This document shows, piece after piece, positions 49,548-62,144 of a DNA stretch of 64,000 bases (position 1 is its first letter; every line of letters begins with the position of its first letter). The stretch spans positions 248,001-312,000 of the forward strand of contig CDRNST010000078.1 in NCBI GenBank assembly GCA_977016875.1, written 5' to 3'. A model generated the notes under the pieces. That model was not told where the DNA came from. It made no database searches and saw nothing but the letters and a program-made list of their open reading frames with translations. The translations under genes were made by a program, and so were the position numbers. The DNA is from Pavona decussata (lineage: Eukaryota).

Positions 49548-50499
49548 CTTGATTCTTTGTTTATCACCTGAACTTAACCATTACGCAAATTTGTCCCCGA
49601 TTATAACTCTCAAAATCCCCAAAAGCCACCGTGATGGTTGAATTTGGAGAGGACTTTACATTAGGGAAATCCGAAAACCAAAAACAAGCAAACTAAAACT
49701 GTATAAAAGTTCAGCGTACTTCAGCGAACAAAGTAATCAACATGACGACGGTGTTGTGTGACCACTTGGCGCGTGACATGGAAAACTCAGCCCAGCTCTC
49801 TCTCGGACCCTCGTCACGTTTTTAAACATATAAATTGATCGAGGAAGAGTTACAATAATGGTCCGTTTTTCTTAACAATAACCCTACTAATACAAGGGAT
49901 AATGAACATTATTACATTTCATGTTTGGTTACAGATGACCAGGATGGAATTAAATTGCAACTGAAAAAAAAAACCCTAAGATAAATGGCCAATTTTTAAA
50001 ATTTCTTCCGGGATTTCTTCTCTTTAGTACTACGAAAAGCGCTGAAACGTACTGGTCAATCTAGAATTGAAATCACCTGATATTTTCGTCTCAGGGCCCT
50101 ACTGAAGAGCTATTTCAAAGTTGAGCAAAGGCTGCTTGTCAGATATTTTGTGCAGTTTTGACCAAGACACAGCAGATCTCGATCTCCTCCGACAATTTCA
50201 CTCTTATCGTTACGGGACAGATTTTGGTGTTTCCTCACACCGACACACACTGTAGTTCCAGAGAACACTTTATTCCTTGTTTCTCAGTCCGACGACCAAT
50301 TGAAACAGTCCTTTTCAAGACCTTGTATTTATGTGATTTGACCACATTCATCATTTCACACATTTTTAATGGAAAAAGCAATATTGTCTTGCAGAATGGG
50401 GTGACTTCAGCTGTTCCCTACCTCCAGGTCATCAGCTTAATTACAATATTTTTTCCATTACAGTTGCGAATCAAGCTCAAATCAAACACATGTTTGGCG

Positions 50500-51428
50500 A
50501 TGTTGCATCACTGGTTCAAGCTCATGTTCTCAATTCCTCGACGAGAGCCGATGACGAGGACAGAGAAGTTCATTCAGTGGTCTTCCCTGGTTGCTTACTG
50601 TATCGGTGGCTTCTCCTTTCTAGCCGCCCCACAGTTATATAACATCATACTGCAACTGGACTACCGAGGACACTCCGAAGGATTCATACGATTAGTGGGA
50701 CTCGGAATTGTTGATGTTGGTTTGATATTCGTCGTATTGGCTCGTTGCGATCATAAAATATACCGGATGGGTACCATATCAGCCTCAACCTTTAGCCGTC
50801 TGCTCTGGGTACCGGCCAAGGGTCTGATGCTGATCTTTAGAGATATGTTACCTCTAGCATTTGCACTGATTTTCATGGCTCTCGATTCGTCCCTCTCTTT
50901 GAGCACCCTAGTGATTTGGTACTGTGAGACGGAAGAGCCTTCGTCTCGCGCCTTTTTCAAAGAATTACTCTCATTTGTACGAGACTGCCGTGGACTTAAA
51001 TCGGGAGGCTCGATCTTGGTGGCTTTCATTCTTGGTGTAATTCAAGTGATCTTTTGGTACGTCTTCGTGGTGAGGCCAGATTTTGCTCAAATAATATTCA
51101 ACCTCGATCAATTTGAGGGATTTGCCAGTAGATATTTGTCCACATTCATTTACCTACTCCAATACACGGCTTATATCACGTACTCTGCGCTAACAATGTT
51201 AACCGCTGCCTTGTGCCCATCTCTTTAAGCTATCGAGTCTTAATTGACCTGCCAGTCTTGCTAGTGCTGTTTCTTGTTGATCAAATTGAGAGAAATCTCT
51301 TTCTAGCAATACTGATTATTAATCTCCTAAGTGTCATCATTTTTCTATTGTCGATAGCAATTGAAAAGCGATCTAGGGAGAATACCGCAATCGACACGAA
51401 CAATGGACAAGACGATTCCCCTTTATAA
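50500..51428 (+). pseudogene. Uncharacterised ~8-TM membrane protein with intronless coding region, copy 1, apparent 1-bp frameshift at ~51159
   Basis: ORFs 50158-51228 and 51213-51428 join if one base is restored. Copy 1 reads ctactc-caatacac where copy 2 reads ctgctctcaattcac. Confidence 0.75.
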
Positions 51429-54995: not shown

Positions 54996-56759
54996 CTTTC
55001 TCATTTAAGTAAACTGTCTCCACATTCATCAACCTTGAATTGCGCGTGACATTGCGTGGCGTGTGTCTTTCTTGCGGATACGTGAATTTTCATTATGCTG
55101 GCGCGAGAAACAAGGCCAGTTTTAGCCTGAAAACTAAGGCTATTTTAACGAGTTTTGCACTGTGAATTTTTCTGAAAATTGGCTCAATATTAGGATTTAG
55201 CTGGTATTTGTACTCCAAAAAAATCTTAGGGAGAATTATACGTGAACAACTCCAATAAATGGTAAAAACGAAAATTGGCCAAACGTATGAACAGAATTTG
55301 TTTTGACTTTACGAGGAGATACTTTGGAGTTTCTCTCTTCTTTACACAAAAAATAGCGAAATTTTACCTCGCAAAATTCGGACAAACCCGTTTTGAAACT
55401 AGCTGGGAGTGAAGGAATCAACATATGTATCATCCGCTGGTTGCCATGGAAACGGGGTTTACCAGTTGTAAGGGTGTTTTTAGCAAAGCATAAGGACTTA
55501 GGTACTCGAAACTATGTTTGAACCCAGATATTTTCACAGGGCTGAAAGAACCAGAACACCAAGAAAAATATATATCACTACTAGCGAAAACTGAAGAAAT
55601 GGTATAGAGCCCCCTTAAATTTCTTCTCTTTAGTACTACGAAAAGCGCTGAAACGAACTGGTCAATCGAGAATTGAAATCACCTGACATTTTCGTCCCGG
55701 GGCCCTACTGAAGAGCTATTTCATGTTTGAGCAAAGGCTGCTTGTCAGATATTTTGGGCAGTTTTGACCAAGACACAGCAGATCTTCCCCGGCAATTCTC
55801 CTTTAACAAGAAAAACAAACTCTTATTGTTACCGGACAGATTTGGGCGTTTCCTCACACTACACACACTGTAGTTTCAGAGAACACTTTATTCCTTGTTT
55901 CTCAGTCCGACGACCAATTGCAACAGTCGTTTTCAAGACCTGGTATTTATGTGATTTGACCATATTCATCATTTCACAAATTTTTAATGGAAAATAGCAG
56001 TATTGTTTTGCAGAATAGGGTGACTTCAGCTGTTCGGTACCTCTATGTCATCAGCTTAATTACGATATTTTTTCCATTTAATACAGTCACGAATCAAGCT
56101 CAAATCAAACACATGTTTGGCGATGTTGCATCACTGGTTCAAGCTCATGTTCTCCATTCCTCGACGAGAGCCGATGACGAGGACAGAGAAGTTCATGCAG
56201 TGGTCTTCCCTGGTTGCTTACTGTATCGGTGGCTTCTCCTTTCTAGCCGCCCCACAGTTATATAACATCATACTGCAACTGGACTACCGAGGACACTCCC
56301 AAGGATTCATACGATTAGTGGGACTCGGAATTGTTGATGTTGGTTTGATATTCGTCGTATTGGCTCGTTGCGATCATAAAATATACCGGATGGGTACCAT
56401 ATCAGCCTCAATCCTTAGCCGTCTGCTCTGGGTACCGGCCACTGGTCTGATGCTGATCTTTAGAGATATGTTACCTCTAGCATTTGCACTGATTTTCATG
56501 ACTCTCGATTCGTCCCTCTCTTTGAGCACCCTAGTGACTTGGTACTGTGAGACGGAAGAGCCTTTGTTTCGAGCCTTTTTCAAAGAATTACTCGAATCAA
56601 TACGAGACTGCCGTGGACTTAAATCGGGGGTCTTGATCTTGGTGGCTTTCATTCTTGGCGTAATTCAAGTGATCTTTTGGTACGTCTTCGTGGTGAGGCC
56701 AGATTTTGCTCAAATAATATTCAACCTCGATCAATTTGAGGGATTTGCCAGCGGATATT

Positions 56760-59700
56760 TATGAGGGGTGATCTCCGCCAAAATTATGTTTCAAATTGTG
56801 TTATGCAGAATCTCCAATTTTTCTTATTGGCAATCAAATTCTTTTCTAACGAGATTGGAGCGGTAATTGATATATCACAAAAGAAATTGAAGAAACAGAA
56901 CAGAATTTAAGACACGCGAAGTGAAATAAAGACATTAAAACAGAAATTGAAGCAACAGAACAGAAATTACAACACAATTAACAACCGATCCAATTTCTGT
57001 TCTGTTGCTTCAATTTCTGTTCTGATGGGGGTGTGGCTCAAACGGGGAACCGAGCAGAACCTGGGTAAGAACTAGTTCTACATTATAATTTATGAAAATC
57101 TATTCGATGATCTTCCCGCGTAAAGAAATTTTTTCCGATTCCAAGATGGCCGCTGATGAGAATGTATTTCGGCGAAGTATTCTAGATGTTGTGGGAGAAG
57201 TATTGAGAGATCTACAAGCTTCTATGACTGAAAGAGCTTTGTTTCGTCCTGACTGGCTACTCGATGTTGTGAACAGATACGCAGATTCGTTGGGATTTAA
57301 AAGTGTTGACGGGCCTACACGACTCCTGCAGTTCGCATATAGATTGGTCTTAAAGCCTTTATAGCTTAGCTCTTACAAGGGTGTCTTTTAGGGATTTTCC
57401 TTTGCGATATGAAATGAGGGGAGGCTCCTTAAATATATTTCTCAGATATGGTTGATTGTGTATAAGGTGCCATTTCCCCATAAGTATGTTCTTGAGGTTG
57501 GGTAACGCAGGGTGGTATTGCGTTACAAAGGGCAGTATTTTCTTACGTGCATTTTTGTTTCTCTGTTCCAGTGCTTTCTTTCTGTCAGTGAAAATGACCT
57601 CCGAGAGATGTTTTTCTACAGTTGTAGCTGGGTAATCTCTATTCTTGAGGCGTGTTGCAAAATTCCTCATATTCTCTTGAAAAGTGTTATCAGAGGAATT
57701 TGTTCTTAGAATAACGCTTCTCCTTTGATAAAACCTTTCGTGACGCCTGGTGGGTGGCAAGAATAGAAATTCGTGTATTGGAAGGTCTCTGTAGGCTTGA
57801 AGTTTGTTCGCACGTCAAGGATAGAATCCTTGTTGAGTCTGACACCTTTGTACACTATCGTGTCCAAGAATGTAGTTTCTGTTTCTGAGATTTCAGCCGT
57901 GAATTTGATTGTGGGATGGAATTGCTTTTAGAAGGAATTCTTCTATTTTGTTTCTGCTTGTATCCCATACTGATATGACGTCATCGATAAACCTTTTCCA
58001 AAAGATAGGCTTAATGCTGCTCTCTCTGAGTATTTCTTTTTCTATTTTGGCCATGAAGGTGTTAGCAAAGGTTACGGCCATTTTCGTGCCCATGGCTGTT
58101 CCATGGGTTTGAAGATAATCTTTCCCGTTAAATTGAAACGAGTTTTCTTGTAGGATCAGACTAAGCATCTCGCTTAAAAACCTGGTAGGAACTGGAGGGT
58201 TTCCTTGGTGAAATTCTTCGTATCCATTGCATACAGTGGTAATACCCTCTTGTGGTATGTTCGTGTATAGGCTTCTGTCGTCCATTGAAACAAGTATAGC
58301 ACTTTTAGGCAGTTTAATCTTCTCGATGAAGTTAATAAAGTCTGTCGTATCTTTAAGATACGAAGCTTGTTGTTGTGCTATTGGCTGAATAAGGTGGTCA
58401 ACAAATGCTGAGATCCGTTCTGTAGGGCCGGAACACCCTGGGATAATAGGTCTTCCGACAAGTGTCGGTTTGTGAATCTTAGTGAGTGTGTAAAACACTG
58501 GAATTCGCGGAGTATCAGGTGTAAGAGAGAGCCATTTAGCCGTCATTTCGTCAATGTGGCCTTCTGAAAGCAGTGATTTAATAGGTTGTTGAGCTTTTTT
58601 GGCTGTAGTTTCAGCCATTGGTTTGTCTAGGGGTAGGTAGTTATTTAAATCATTAGTAGAACTTGACCCTCGTTAAGTTTGTCTTGTCTGCTTATCAATA
58701 CGGTTGTGCTCCCCTTATCAGATTTTTTAAGAATAATGCTTTTGTTACGCGATAGCTCTTTGAGAGCTTGGTGCTCTCCCCTAGATATATTATCTTTTGG
58801 CTTGTCAAATTCTATACTTGCGAGCTCAAATTTGACCTCCTCTAGGAAGGTCTCTAGAGCTACTGATGGCTGGACTGGTGGTTTCCAGTCTGACTTAACG
58901 TGGAAAGGATGAGGTTCGCTTTCTTCTCCGTGAAAAATATACTGTAGTCGGGTCTAGTCGCATTCGTCTCGCAAATTGATCAAAATCCGCGAGAAGTTTG
59001 CGCCTGATAAGATTTTCTTTTGTCACGGGTGTTGGGATAAACTTAAGACCACGCGATAGTAAAGTAATTTGCTCATCTGTCAGTTGTTCATTTGACAGGT
59101 TTTTGACATGCTGTTTGCGTGACTCAATGGCGTTACAAAAGTGCTTTTTGTCTTTGATTTTTCTCCGCTCTTTTCTTTTTCGGTTTTTGGCCGTTTTGTT
59201 AACTCTGTGGTTTGCTTTCCCTTTTCCCCTTACTTCTAAGGAGTCTGATAAGACACAAGGGTAAGATTCACTCTGTTTATTCTCACGTACTTGTGATCTC
59301 ATTTGTTCTAACAGTACATGACTAGCTATGACTACGCGTACATGACTCCGGGCTAATGTCTCATCGCCATTCATTGTGGTGTTGGTCGCTGTGTTGCTCC
59401 AACCCTCGATAACTTCTTTAACCTCCTCTAACAAGGAGATACATCGAGCTGAAAGTCCTCCCTCGCAGGTGCTTTCCTCTCGAGTGGCCATTTCAAACAA
59501 GGAAATAATTTTCTATACGCGGCAGCGCGGCAACTTAGTAATCGGATGTATTTTCATAAATTATAATGTAAAACTAGTTCTTACCCAGGTTCTGCTCGGT
59601 TCCCCGTTTGAGCCACACCCCCATCAGAACAGAAATTGAAGCAACAGAACAGAAATTGGATCGGTTGTTAATTGTGTTGTAATTTCTGTTCTGTTGCTTC

Positions 59701-59888
59701 AATTTCTGTTTTAATGTCTTTATTTCACTTCGCGTGTCTTAAATTCTGTTCTGTTTCTTCAATTTCTTTTGTGATATGTCAATTACCGCTCCATTCTCGT
59801 TAGAAAAGAATTTGATTGCCAATAAGAAAAATTGGAGATCTGTATAACACAATTTGAAACATAATTTTGGCGGAGATCACCCCTCATA
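56760..59888. mobile_element. Composite DNA transposon with 340-bp TIRs and 6-bp TSD (IS3EU-like ends) carrying a Penelope-like RT
   Basis: TIRs 56760-57099 and 59550-59888, termini TATGAGGGG...CCCCTCATA, TSD GATATT at 56754-56759 and 59889-59894. Confidence 0.9.
57296..59370 (-). mobile_element. Degenerate Penelope-like element reverse transcriptase, lacking a GIY-YIG endonuclease
   Basis: Minus-strand ORF pieces contain NLSNEQLT..LLSRGLKFIPTP, FYTLTKIHKP..GRPII, YLKDTTDF, SLYTNIP, GTAMGTKMA, WKRFIDDV, LPFVTQYHP and KSLKDTLVRAKL*, with several frameshifts and stops. Confidence 0.9.
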
Positions 59889-60510
59889 GATATTTGTCCA
59901 TATTCCTTTACCTGCTCTCAATTCACGGCTTATATCACGTACTCTGCGCTAACAATGTTAACCGCTGCCTTGTGCCCATCTCTTTAAGCTATCGAGTCTT
60001 AATTGACCTGCCAGTCTTGCTAGTGCTGTTTCTTGCTGATCAAATTGAGAGAAATCTCTTTCTAGCAATATTGATTATTAATCTCCTAAGTGTTATCATT
60101 TTTCTATCGTCGATAGCAATTGAAAGGCGATGTAGGAGGAATACCGCATTCGACCCGAACACTGGACAAGACGATTTCCCTTTATTAGCTAAAAAACAAG
60201 ATGATCATAGTGCCTCAAGTCGTCAGTGACATCGAGAGCATTACAGAACAATGGAAGTCCACTTTTTTACTTAAAATCCTTCAAGTGTTTATTTGCGGGA
60301 GCACAATCACAGATTCTCAAGCGCTACACTTATCTCCTCTCAATGAAACCAATTCTCCGTCCCGTGATCCTTCCGTGTTACAAAGGATCAGTGCTTCCGC
60401 CAGAGAAAAAAAAGACTGCACACAGTTTAGAAGACTGGCTTACGAGAAGGCCCACTTCTTAGAGTTTCACGCAAGTCCTCCACAGAGGCTTCTTCAAGCC
60501 GCTTCTCTTC

Positions 60511-60835
60511 CATCCTCGTTCCCAGAGCCTACGATCTTTTGGTCAGCGGTTGGATGGTAGGCCCTGGTACCAGCTGTTACCGGATGTCGTGAATTTCACG
60601 ACATCTGGTAGCGTACGCTCAGTGTGATAAATTACCATTGCGCTTGCTCAGTATTATTATAATTATTGCTCAGTATTGGTAAATAAAGACAAATGCACAG
60701 AAGCGTAGCATTTTTCACCTCATAGGGCATCAGGTTTTCTACAGCCAATAAAAAAAAAAAAGATATTTTTGGATGGACCCAGAGCCACTCGTTCATTAAT
60801 AAAAAAAAAAAGTTGGGGCTCTGGGGACGAGAATG
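60511..60835. mobile_element. MITE with CA...TG termini and 9-bp TSD; another copy starts at ~63967 at the window edge
   Basis: CATCCTCGTTCCCAGAGCC ... GGCTCTGGGGACGAGAATG. TSD CTTCTCTTC at 60502-60510 and 60836-60844. Confidence 0.88.
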
Positions 60836-61557
60836 CTTCTCTTCAGTCTCCGCTCAATTATTACCCGTGAGAGAAGCCTCACAGGAGGAGGGAGGCGAAA
60901 GGAGATCCAAGAACTTTATGCTCGCTTTCTCGTAAATCTAAGTTTTGTAGCAAGATGCTTATGAGAGACTTAAACAAGATGGTCTTTGTCGTAGACTAGC
61001 CTTCTTTTTTTTTTTTTCAAAAGATCGTCGAAGACGTCGAACGGGAGGATTTTCCAAAAATTGAGTACTTTAAAACAGCTCAGAAGCCATACCCTTTCGA
61101 GCCGCACGTATTATTAGTAGATGAAAAACTTCCTTTAAGTGGGTATTAAAAAAAGCCGGGAAAACCAATAAGCTATCAAAAAGTATGAATTTATTAGAAA
61201 CACGATCATATCTTTATAGCATAATCAACTAAAATAATTTTAGGCCAAAACTGCTTCTAAATAATTCCAGGAACTTGGGCGGCTTAACAGGTGTCGTGGT
61301 CCGTCGTGGATCGAACTAACACAGCCCTCAAATTACATTATTTCTACCTCTCGTGGAACATCTTCCTTCAATCTGAAGAAACTGGTATCTGAGTAACAAA
61401 AGTAGAAACTGATATACGTTACATGTAAATAACTGATAATATATTGTTATGAAGCTAATGTGTGTTTTCGACTTTAATTTACATTTACTTATTTACATAT
61501 ATTAGGTCGGCAAAATCGTTAAGATATCACACCAACCGTAAAAATAAAAAAAAAATA

Positions 61558-61598
61558 GATAAATAAATAAGTAAATAAATAAATAAATAAATAAATAA
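61558..61598 (+). repeat. (TAAA)n microsatellite
   Basis: Directly visible. Confidence 0.9.
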
Positions 61599-62144
61599 GG
61601 TAAGTAAATGAATAAAATACAGATATATTAAAATATAAAATAATGATATAAAAATTAAATAGGGAAAACTACGTGAGTTGTATTTAACTATTATTTAAGA
61701 AAAGCTGATAACCTATATTTAAACATTTCTAAGAAAGTTGATGAAACAATGGCCTAAGGAAGGCAGTTCCAGTCCGCTGTAGTTCTTGGAAAAAACGAAA
61801 ATTTAAAAATGTCCATTTTAGAATACAGTTGCCATTTCCTTTCGGTAAAAGTTTGGGAAAAGTTCTTAAATTTTGGTAATTTTGGTAATTTTGGTTATTT
61901 TGATAGCCTTTCGTGATTTTCACTACTACATTGCTGCGTATTTTTGCTGTTTTTATCTGTTACACTAGCTTGATGCATCGGGGAAGATGCCTAAATTAAC
62001 AAGGGGGGCATGTTGTGAAACTAATGTAAGAGTGTGTTTTCGACATTAATTTTAGAATACAGTTGTTATTTCCTTTCGGTAGTTTTGATGGATATTTTTC
62101 AGATTATTTAACATTTTCCTGTTGTTCAAAGATTATAAGTGCCC

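What the first reader, a model, noticed from the sequence alone, without database searches (positions are those of the whole stretch)
56760..59888. Cut-and-paste transposon shell that carries a Penelope-like reverse transcriptase as its only cargo
Seen: near-identical 340-bp TIRs and an intact 6-bp TSD. Just inside each TIR is the start of an inward-pointing ORF (MAADENVFRRSILDVVGEVL... on +, MATREESTCEGGLSARCISLLEEVKE... on -). Both stubs are cut off after roughly 40-50 codons, and everything between them is PLE RT sequence. Known: TAY..RTA termini with a 6-bp TSD fit the IS3EU DNA transposon superfamily, which has two ORFs. Inference: the transposase interior was replaced by a retroelement, giving a class I/class II chimera. 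If it moved as a unit, DNA transposition would be spreading an RT gene.
Basis: partly seen in the sequence, partly recalled or inferred. Interest (0 to 1): 0.78.

Follow-up and report, generated by a model that had tools for sequence, protein, structure and literature searches.

The report
DNA transposon carrying a dead Penelope-like RT
A cut-and-paste jumping gene in a stony-coral genome lost its own genes, had the gap filled by a broken copy of a retroelement's reverse transcriptase, and was then moved as one unit to at least nine places; this is a real but fairly ordinary passenger, of interest mainly for how it formed.

Summary
Window 56760-59888 is a 3,129-bp element with 349-bp inverted ends, TA..TA tips and a GATATT target duplication. 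A tandem paralogue of the interrupted host ORF has one GATATT.

The shell is a non-autonomous IS3EU/GingerRoot transposon. A 10.3-kb relative with the same ends encodes an integrase-type (rva_4) transposase and a HECT-like gene. The two stubs are the starts of those genes.

The interior is residues 186-838 of a Penelope-like RT family that has no endonuclease. Its 3' end is the natural one. Its 5' end is truncated and joined through microhomology and a templated filler.

At least nine loci share the junctions but have different flanks and duplications, so the chimera moved as a unit. The copy on C218 is 99.7% identical.

Every copy has a broken RT frame. One frameshift is shared by six copies, so the RT is a dead passenger, not a working gene being spread.

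A second derivative carries a different Penelope-like 3' fragment in the same orientation. This points to reverse transcription primed at a break inside the transposon.

Earlier scan notes cover the endonuclease-less RT family and the IS3EU-HECT pairing elsewhere in this genome, but not this chimera.

Presence/absence polymorphism was not shown.

The parts
56754..56759 (.). left copy of the 6-bp target-site duplication GATATT
   Evidence: The paralogous site at window ~51121 has one copy only.
56760..57108 (+). left terminal inverted repeat, 349 bp, tip TATGAGGGG; holds subterminal repeats and a 36-nt hairpin at 56933-57027
   Evidence: I1, I2, I5. The same TIR occurs at 17 or more loci.
57147..57294 (+). 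5' stub (49 codons) of the IS3EU transposase gene
   Evidence: 94% identical to residues 1-51 of the 210-aa first ORF of the autonomous-like copy (L036 4978-5610, minus strand), which is followed by the rva_4 core.
57295..59319 (-). fragment of an endonuclease-less Penelope-like element (family A): residues 186-838 of the RT, the stop codon and about 64 bp of 3' tail; frame broken several times
   Evidence: 96.5% identical to free copy L051 3044-5070. tblastn against P0002. The 3' tail matches that of 18 free tail copies.
59320..59334 (.). junction filler: 5 nt shared by all chimeric copies, plus 10 nt found only in this copy and the C218 copy
59335..59491 (-). 5' stub (about 50 codons) of the second IS3EU gene, the HECT-like gene
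   Evidence: Same start as ORF L035 877-1626, which lies upstream of HECT-matching ORFs on the same strand.
59541..59888 (-). right terminal inverted repeat
59889..59894 (.). right copy of the target-site duplication GATATT
56117..56759 (+). upstream part of the host ORF that the element interrupts; the frame continues at 59895-60229
   Evidence: Paralogues have open frames of 320-370 aa.

Best explanation
This is a non-autonomous IS3EU/GingerRoot cut-and-paste transposon. It keeps only the cis parts of its parent: two 349-bp TIRs, both promoter-proximal regions, and the first ~50 codons of the two inward-facing genes (transposase and a HECT-like gene). The roughly 9 kb between them was replaced in a single ancestral event by a 5'-truncated copy of an endonuclease-less Penelope-like retroelement.

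The most likely origin (inferred) is as follows. A free 3' end on the top strand of the transposase-side arm was exposed by a break or an unfinished repair gap inside the transposon. That end primed reverse transcription at the 3' end of the retroelement RNA. The cDNA was then joined to the other arm by microhomology-mediated end joining.

The chimera was afterwards moved in trans by an IS3EU transposase, producing a fresh 6-bp duplication at each site, to at least nine loci. It kept moving after the RT frame was broken. The RT is therefore passive cargo. The window copy is one of the youngest and sits inside a host ORF.
For: Shell and mobility:
- TIRs, TA..TA tips and the 6-bp duplication are present.
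- Eight other loci carry the same TIR-stub-RT structure: C218, C233, C31, C51, C188, C354, C289 and C91.
- Flanks are unrelated at all nine loci. Matching duplications differ at the six loci where both ends can be read: GATATT, AGATGG, CTTTTC, AAAATC, GAAAAG and CGTTAC/CATTAC.
- The C218 copy is 99.7% identical over 3,133 bp.
- The autonomous-like copy C362:76733-86995 has the duplication CAATTC, an HTH-bearing N-terminal ORF, an rva_4 core and HECT-like ORFs.
- Published IS3EU/GingerRoot features are TA..TA tips and a 6-bp duplication, and the superfamily is known in corals (PMC10045372, PMC6839031).

Cargo:
- Free copies of family A extend at least 226 bp further at the 5' end and stop 4-6 nt beyond the chimera's 3' boundary.
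- Eighteen free copies of the tail end variably after TTTTAAA, and the chimera ends within that range.
- Related full-length proteins (838-902 aa) all stop at ...LV(R/K)AKL. This is exactly where a canonical 1,026-aa element of the same genome continues into its CCHH and GIY-YIG domains (36% identity over 652 aa, E=9e-125).
- The 5' junction has ATGTA microhomology and a filler that recreates a 9-nt copy of adjacent transposon sequence.

Independent repeat of the event:
- The 1,549-bp derivative at C299 (duplication TATATC) holds the last ~490 bp of a different RT family of the same type. It has the same orientation, its homologous natural 3' end is flush with the transposase-side arm, and its breakpoints lie 25 and 9-18 bp from those of the main chimera.

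Dead cargo:
- Every copy has frameshifts or stops.
- A 5-nt deletion near 57920 is shared by six copies. It is absent from two other chimeric copies and from the free retroelements.
Against: - No intermediate or empty precursor was found, so the one-step origin is inferred from junction anatomy only.
- Only one autonomous-like copy exists in the assembly, and its integrity was not established.
- Placement of the transposase among curated IS3EU sequences could not be done because Repbase is not available here.
- Breakpoints of four derivative types cluster within about 30 bp on the left and about 80 bp on the right. This could mean serial descent rather than independent events, which would weaken the argument from two independent fills.
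- No RNA-run contig crosses a chimeric junction.
Confidence: 0.8

Rival explanations
1. This was an ordinary nested insertion. A Penelope-like element retrotransposed into a full-length or already deleted IS3EU element, and later unrelated deletions removed the rest of the interior, ending by chance at the edges of the retroelement.
For: Penelope-like elements are very abundant in this genome: 915 or more and 933 or more first-pass candidates. Nested insertions do occur in this family; for example, the C289 copy carries a further 3.7-kb insertion with another RT fragment.
Against: The natural 3' end of the retroelement lies exactly at the junction in two different derivatives. No transposon interior remains on either side. 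The 5' junction carries microhomology and a templated filler, which is typical of a one-step joining.
Confidence: 0.12
2. This was DNA-level capture. During gap repair after excision, the repair polymerase switched template to a genomic DNA copy of the retroelement, as with filler DNA in Ds or P-element derivatives or Pack-MULE-type capture. No reverse transcription was involved.
For: Microhomology and a templated filler at the 5' junction. Breakpoints cluster about 510-610 bp from each tip, as expected if repair synthesis stalls.
Against: Template switching into a DNA copy has no reason to start at the RNA 3' terminus. Yet both fills, families A and B, begin there and have the same polarity relative to the priming arm.
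Confidence: 0.06
3. The cargo is functional. Either the chimera supplies RT activity, or its two convergent promoters make double-stranded RNA that silences the retroelement family.
For: Both promoter-proximal regions and both start codons are kept and face each other across the RT sequence. In the window and C218 copies the stub ORF happens to be in frame with the RT.
Against: In the majority form of the junction the stub is out of frame and stops at once. All copies have broken RT frames, and one frameshift predates most transpositions. No junction-spanning contig appears in the RNA-type runs. Silencing was not tested at all.
Confidence: 0.02

Closest known systems
IS3EU/GingerRoot DNA transposons (Repbase superfamily; Cerbin et al. 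2019, PMC6839031; Kojima and Bao 2023, PMC10045372)
   Same: TA..TA tips, a 6-bp target duplication, TIRs, and an integrase-related DDE transposase without an HHCC finger. The superfamily is already known from corals.
   Different: The TIRs are longer (349 bp against the 100-150 bp reported for GingerRoot). This copy encodes no transposase. Its interior is retroelement sequence.
Internally deleted non-autonomous DNA transposons formed by abortive gap repair with filler DNA (Ds from Ac, P-element derivatives; recalled from the literature, not read here)
   Same: The ends and subterminal regions are kept, the interior is lost, and the new junction shows microhomology and short templated filler.
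   Different: The filler here is 2 kb of reverse-transcribed retroelement that starts at the RNA's natural 3' end.
Endonuclease-independent retroelement insertion or cDNA capture at DNA breaks (L1 in repair-deficient cells, Ty1 cDNA at HO breaks; EN-minus Penelope-like Athena/Coprina at telomeres, summarised in PMC8557442)
   Same: An RT without its own nuclease, a free DNA 3' end used as primer, 5' truncation, microhomology at the distal junction, and loss of target DNA.
   Different: The break lies inside a DNA transposon at an internal chromosomal site. The product stayed mobile as a class II element.
Pack-MULEs, Helitron capture and other cargo-carrying DNA transposons (reviewed in PMC6431247)
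   Same: Foreign sequence lies between functional transposon ends and is amplified in trans.
   Different: The cargo is another mobile element's RT, not host gene fragments. The junctions point to RNA-templated rather than DNA-templated acquisition.

Membership tests
IS3EU/GingerRoot superfamily | 6-bp target-site duplication | tested here: met
   Matching 6-bp repeats that differ between loci were found at the window and at 10 further elements of the TIR family and its distant relatives. The paralogous empty site has one copy.
IS3EU/GingerRoot superfamily | TA..TA termini | tested here: met
   All copies begin TATGAGGGG and end CCCCTCATA. The criterion comes from PMC10045372.
IS3EU/GingerRoot superfamily | Autonomous members encode an integrase-related DDE transposase akin to IS3/IS481 | tested here: met
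   The C362 copy matches rva_4 (PF24764) at E=5e-72 and rve at 9e-6. NCBIfam gives IS481 at 2e-5 and IS3 at 1e-3 for the core, and IS3 at 7e-4 for the N-terminal HTH part.
IS3EU/GingerRoot superfamily | Transposase groups with curated IS3EU/GingerRoot sequences in a tree | not testable with these tools
Penelope-like elements | RT homologous to that of GIY-YIG-bearing Penelope-like elements | tested here: met
   P0002 against the 1,026-aa RT+GIY-YIG ORF of the same genome (L062): 36% identity over 652 aa, E=9e-125, collinear up to the RT/EN boundary.
Penelope-like elements (canonical EN+ clades) | C-terminal CCHH linker and GIY-YIG endonuclease | tested here: not met
   The source family and its relatives end at ...LV(R/K)AKL followed by a stop. 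Free copies end about 70 bp later. It is therefore an EN-minus lineage.
Penelope-like elements | Hammerhead ribozyme in terminal repeats | tested here: inconclusive
   No hammerhead match in window 55000-62000 or in L051/L073 at E<=0.1-1. The fragment lacks the element's 5' part, and full-length copies were not examined.
Penelope-like elements | 5' truncation and variable 3' ends of insertions | tested here: met
   Free copies start at different points. In 18 tail copies the last 0-6 nt vary.
Pack-MULE-type transduplication | Captured host gene fragments acquired at the DNA level | tested here: not met
   The cargo is a retroelement that begins at its natural RNA 3' end.

The most novel reading that the evidence does not exclude
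Breaks or unfinished repair gaps inside IS3EU transposons are a regular entry port for endonuclease-less Penelope-like elements. Their RT primes on the exposed 3' end of the transposon arm, patches the gap, and the patch is then spread by DNA transposition. If so, this family's derivative series would be a natural record of how EN-minus Penelope-like elements reach internal chromosomal sites.
Probability: 0.3. Interest if true: 0.65.

Novelty: new variant of a known kind. Interest (0 to 1): 0.42.

Why it matters
- The finding gives a documented case in which a class II element has mobilised class I sequence as a unit. The junctions are clean enough to read the order of events.
- How Penelope-like elements without an endonuclease insert away from telomeres is an open question; PMC8557442 says so for its EN-minus families.
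- Here two independent fills in one transposon family begin at the natural RNA 3' end, abut a deletion breakpoint and share the same polarity. This is the signature expected if the RT uses pre-existing DNA ends.
- The idea can be tested genome-wide in corals.
- For annotation, the case warns that RT hits flanked by long TIRs can be dead passengers of DNA transposons.

Tried and rejected
1. Presence/absence polymorphism. A contig of run X1 joins 56751 to 59887, and I first read it as an empty allele. It is almost certainly the tandem paralogue at window 51012-51305. That paralogue carries the same CG-to-TA change, and its 59923 T-to-A change is the one read laying listed for this contig; the contig's mismatch counts (one on the left, five on the right) also match the paralogue. 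Polymorphism is therefore untested.

2. Expression. The runs guessed to be RNA (X14, X16) and one metatranscriptome (X19) gave only short contigs, none bridging a chimeric junction. One X16 contig runs from 57087-57294 into the autonomous transposase sequence. Nothing can be concluded about the chimera.

3. A third reverse-transcribed fill. The interior of the C137/C114 derivatives looked like an inverted Penelope-style insertion. It turned out to be a ~900-bp element with its own ~20-bp TIRs (CAGTGTAAAAAGG...) plus an inverted partial copy. That makes it a class II nested element, not a retroelement.

4. The TIRs as Penelope pseudo-LTRs in inverted orientation. Rejected, because the TIR family occurs without any RT, has 6-bp duplications and encloses an integrase-type transposase.

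5. An in-frame stub-RT fusion protein. This holds only in the window and C218 copies, through a 10-bp lineage-specific insertion. The majority junction is out of frame.

6. Rfam. Only weak miRNA-like hits to the TIR hairpin, all far below gathering scores.

7. Pfam on the interrupted host ORF gave no match.

Copies were only compared.

Full report
**What is in the sequence**

Window 56760-59888 is bounded by inverted repeats. One pair of arms is 299 nt and 98% complementary, the other 55 nt and 96%. Together they form 349-bp TIRs with the tips TATGAGGGG...CCCCTCATA. The hexamer GATATT lies directly outside both tips.

Inside the left TIR an ORF starts at 57147 on the + strand. Inside the right TIR an ORF starts at 59491 on the - strand. 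Between 57295 and 59319, on the minus strand, lie ORF pieces with a weak RVT_1 match.

The element interrupts a host ORF whose frame continues across the predicted empty site. That ORF belongs to a family of about ten single-exon ORFs of 320-370 codons. A tandem paralogue at window 51012-51305 is 96.9% identical to the predicted empty site and holds a single GATATT. It serves as a proxy for the unoccupied target.

**The shell is an IS3EU/GingerRoot transposon**

The same TIR occurs at 17 or more loci of the 602-Mb genome. Fetched copies end exactly at the TA tips. They carry 6-bp duplications that differ from locus to locus.

One copy, C362:76733-86995, is 10.3 kb with the duplication CAATTC.
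- A 210-aa ORF begins with the same residues as the left stub and contains a helix-turn-helix region.
- It is followed on the same strand by an ORF matching the Pfam integrase core rva_4 at E=5e-72.
- On the opposite strand, an ORF begins like the right stub and is followed by pieces matching the HECT domain.
- NCBIfam gives weak IS481 and IS3 similarity.

TA..TA termini with 6-bp duplications are the stated hallmark of IS3EU, and IS3EU and GingerRoot form one lineage (PMC10045372). GingerRoot relatives were reported in corals (PMC6839031). Only this one copy of this transposase family is in the assembly; the next relatives are at most 73% identical.

The nearest named proteins come from stony corals.

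**The cargo is a Penelope-like RT without an endonuclease**

The interior is 96.5% identical to free repeat copies, for example L051 3044-5070. Related database proteins of 838-902 aa, in clusters of tens to more than a hundred members, all end at ...LV(R/K)AKL.

An intact 1,026-aa ORF of the same genome carries RT, a CCHH linker and GIY-YIG. It aligns with P0002 at 36% identity over 652 residues (E=9e-125). The alignment ends exactly at its ...LVSAKL, where the endonuclease part begins.

Free copies of the family end about 70 bp after the stop codon, and their flanks then diverge. The source is therefore an EN-minus Penelope-like lineage. This agrees with an earlier scan note on other DNA of this genome (s1-497878).

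**Anatomy of the chimera**

The fragment covers residues 186-838. Free copies extend at least 226 bp further upstream.

At the 3' side, the retroelement tail ends at ...TTTTAAAC. Eighteen free tails end variably 0-6 nt beyond TTTTAAA. The boundary therefore falls within the natural range.

At the 5' side, the majority of chimeric copies have a 5-nt filler. Together with the first retroelement bases it recreates a 9-nt copy of transposon sequence lying 5 nt away, and ATGTA is common to both partners. The window and C218 copies have ten more bases there.

The polarity fits one picture. The + strand of the transposase-side arm, ending at 57294, is the strand whose 3' end would prime first-strand cDNA at the RNA's 3' end. 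This step is inferred.

**It moved as a unit**

The left junction is found at nine loci and the right junction at eight; the C91 copy is truncated. Homology to the window stops at the TIR tips in all of them.

Duplications are distinct: five perfect pairs, one pair with a single mismatch, and three copies where only one end can be read.

Well-aligned copies differ by 0.2-3%. The C218 copy is 99.7% identical over 3,133 bp but sits in unrelated flanks with the duplication AGATGG. The chimera accounts for about half of the loci found for this TIR family. These counts are lower bounds.

**The RT is dead cargo**

Each copy has frameshifts or stops, mostly private to that copy. A 5-nt deletion near 57920 is shared by six copies. 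It is absent from the C289 and C91 copies and from free retroelements; the C51 copy has a variant of it. Transposition therefore went on after the frame was lost.

In the majority junction the stub ORF is out of frame with the RT and stops at once. The in-frame reading seen in the window comes from the ten extra bases.

**A second, independent fill**

The 1,549-bp derivative at C299 (duplication TATATC) contains about 490 bp encoding residues 706-836 of a different RT of the same type (52% identity), plus its tail. That family has at least 915 first-pass candidate copies.

The fragment has the same orientation as family A. Its tail is homologous to that of family A and ends at the homologous position, flush with the transposase-side arm. 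Another copy of that family diverges from it exactly there. Its breakpoints (57269 and 59343) lie 25 and 9-18 bp from those of the main chimera.

**Other derivatives differ**

- The C137/C114 type holds a ~900-bp element with its own short TIRs plus an inverted partial copy. This is a class II nested element.
- C226 is a plain deletion.
- A distant TIR family has foldback copies of the transposase 5' region.

Breakpoints of the four derivative types are nested and clustered about 510-610 bp from each tip, apart from the left breakpoint of the plain deletion, which lies inside the TIR about 250 bp from the tip. This means either a stalling or fragile region, or serial descent from the palindrome-bearing type. 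I cannot tell which.

**What failed**

- The apparent empty-site contig in run X1 is the paralogue, so polymorphism is not shown.
- RNA-type runs gave no junction-spanning contig.
- No hammerhead was found.

**Verdict**

The element is a new variant of known kinds: a cargo-bearing non-autonomous DNA transposon, formed by reverse-transcriptase-mediated break repair. Its main value is the junction evidence on how endonuclease-less Penelope-like elements enter internal sites.

Noticed in passing
window 56117-56759 and 59895-60229; paralogue at window 50494-51305: The element interrupts one member of a small family (about 10 copies) of single-exon ORFs of 320-370 codons that look like multi-pass membrane proteins (no Pfam match). 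An intact tandem paralogue lies 5.6 kb upstream. That paralogue can mimic an empty allele in short-read contigs.
   Followed up: partly
L038 1044-1946 (C137) and L042 (C114); at least 750 first-pass candidates genome-wide: A ~900-bp non-coding element with ~20-bp TIRs starting CAGTGTAAAAAGG. Inside the IS3EU derivative it is present as a full copy plus an inverted 365-bp partial copy, with the same terminus flush against transposon sequence on both sides. The superfamily is unknown. This may record an aberrant transposition that deleted the IS3EU interior.
   Followed up: partly
window 57296-57373; L073 (C62:559900-561750); L051 1320-1397 and 2540-2617: The last 78 bp of the RT family (last codons plus tail) are shared at 94-96% with many copies of another repeat. 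That repeat often occurs as inverted pairs about 1.4 kb apart. It is probably a non-autonomous element that borrows the same RT.
   Followed up: no
left breakpoints 57269, 57294 and 57296-98; right breakpoints at L035 ~1030, 1042, 1075 and 1108: Deletion breakpoints of four different derivative types of one IS3EU family cluster within about 30 bp (left) and about 80 bp (right). Both clusters lie near codon 45-70 of the two inward genes, and the breakpoints form a nested series.
   Followed up: partly
L041 1499-5164 (C289): One chimeric copy carries a further 3.7-kb insertion. It contains a fragment of the second RT family in the opposite orientation, so Penelope-like sequence has entered this element more than once.
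   Followed up: partly
L048, L049, L050 (C87, C233, C58): Elements of about 1.9 kb with TIRs 70-73% identical to those of the window and matching 6-bp duplications. They hold transposase N-terminal fragments in both orientations (foldback), as an earlier scan note described.
   Followed up: no
window 56933-57027 and 59622-59716: Each TIR contains a 36-nt perfect-stem hairpin built from the subterminal repeat AACAGAAATTGAAGCAACAGAACAGAAATT. Rfam gives only sub-threshold miRNA-like hits. These repeats may be transposase-binding sites.
   Followed up: no
L062 828-3908 (C179) and L064 (C273): Intact ORFs of 1,026 and 888 aa from a canonical RT+GIY-YIG Penelope-like element. There are at least 933 GIY-YIG first-pass candidates in the genome, so EN-plus and EN-minus lineages coexist.
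   Followed up: partly
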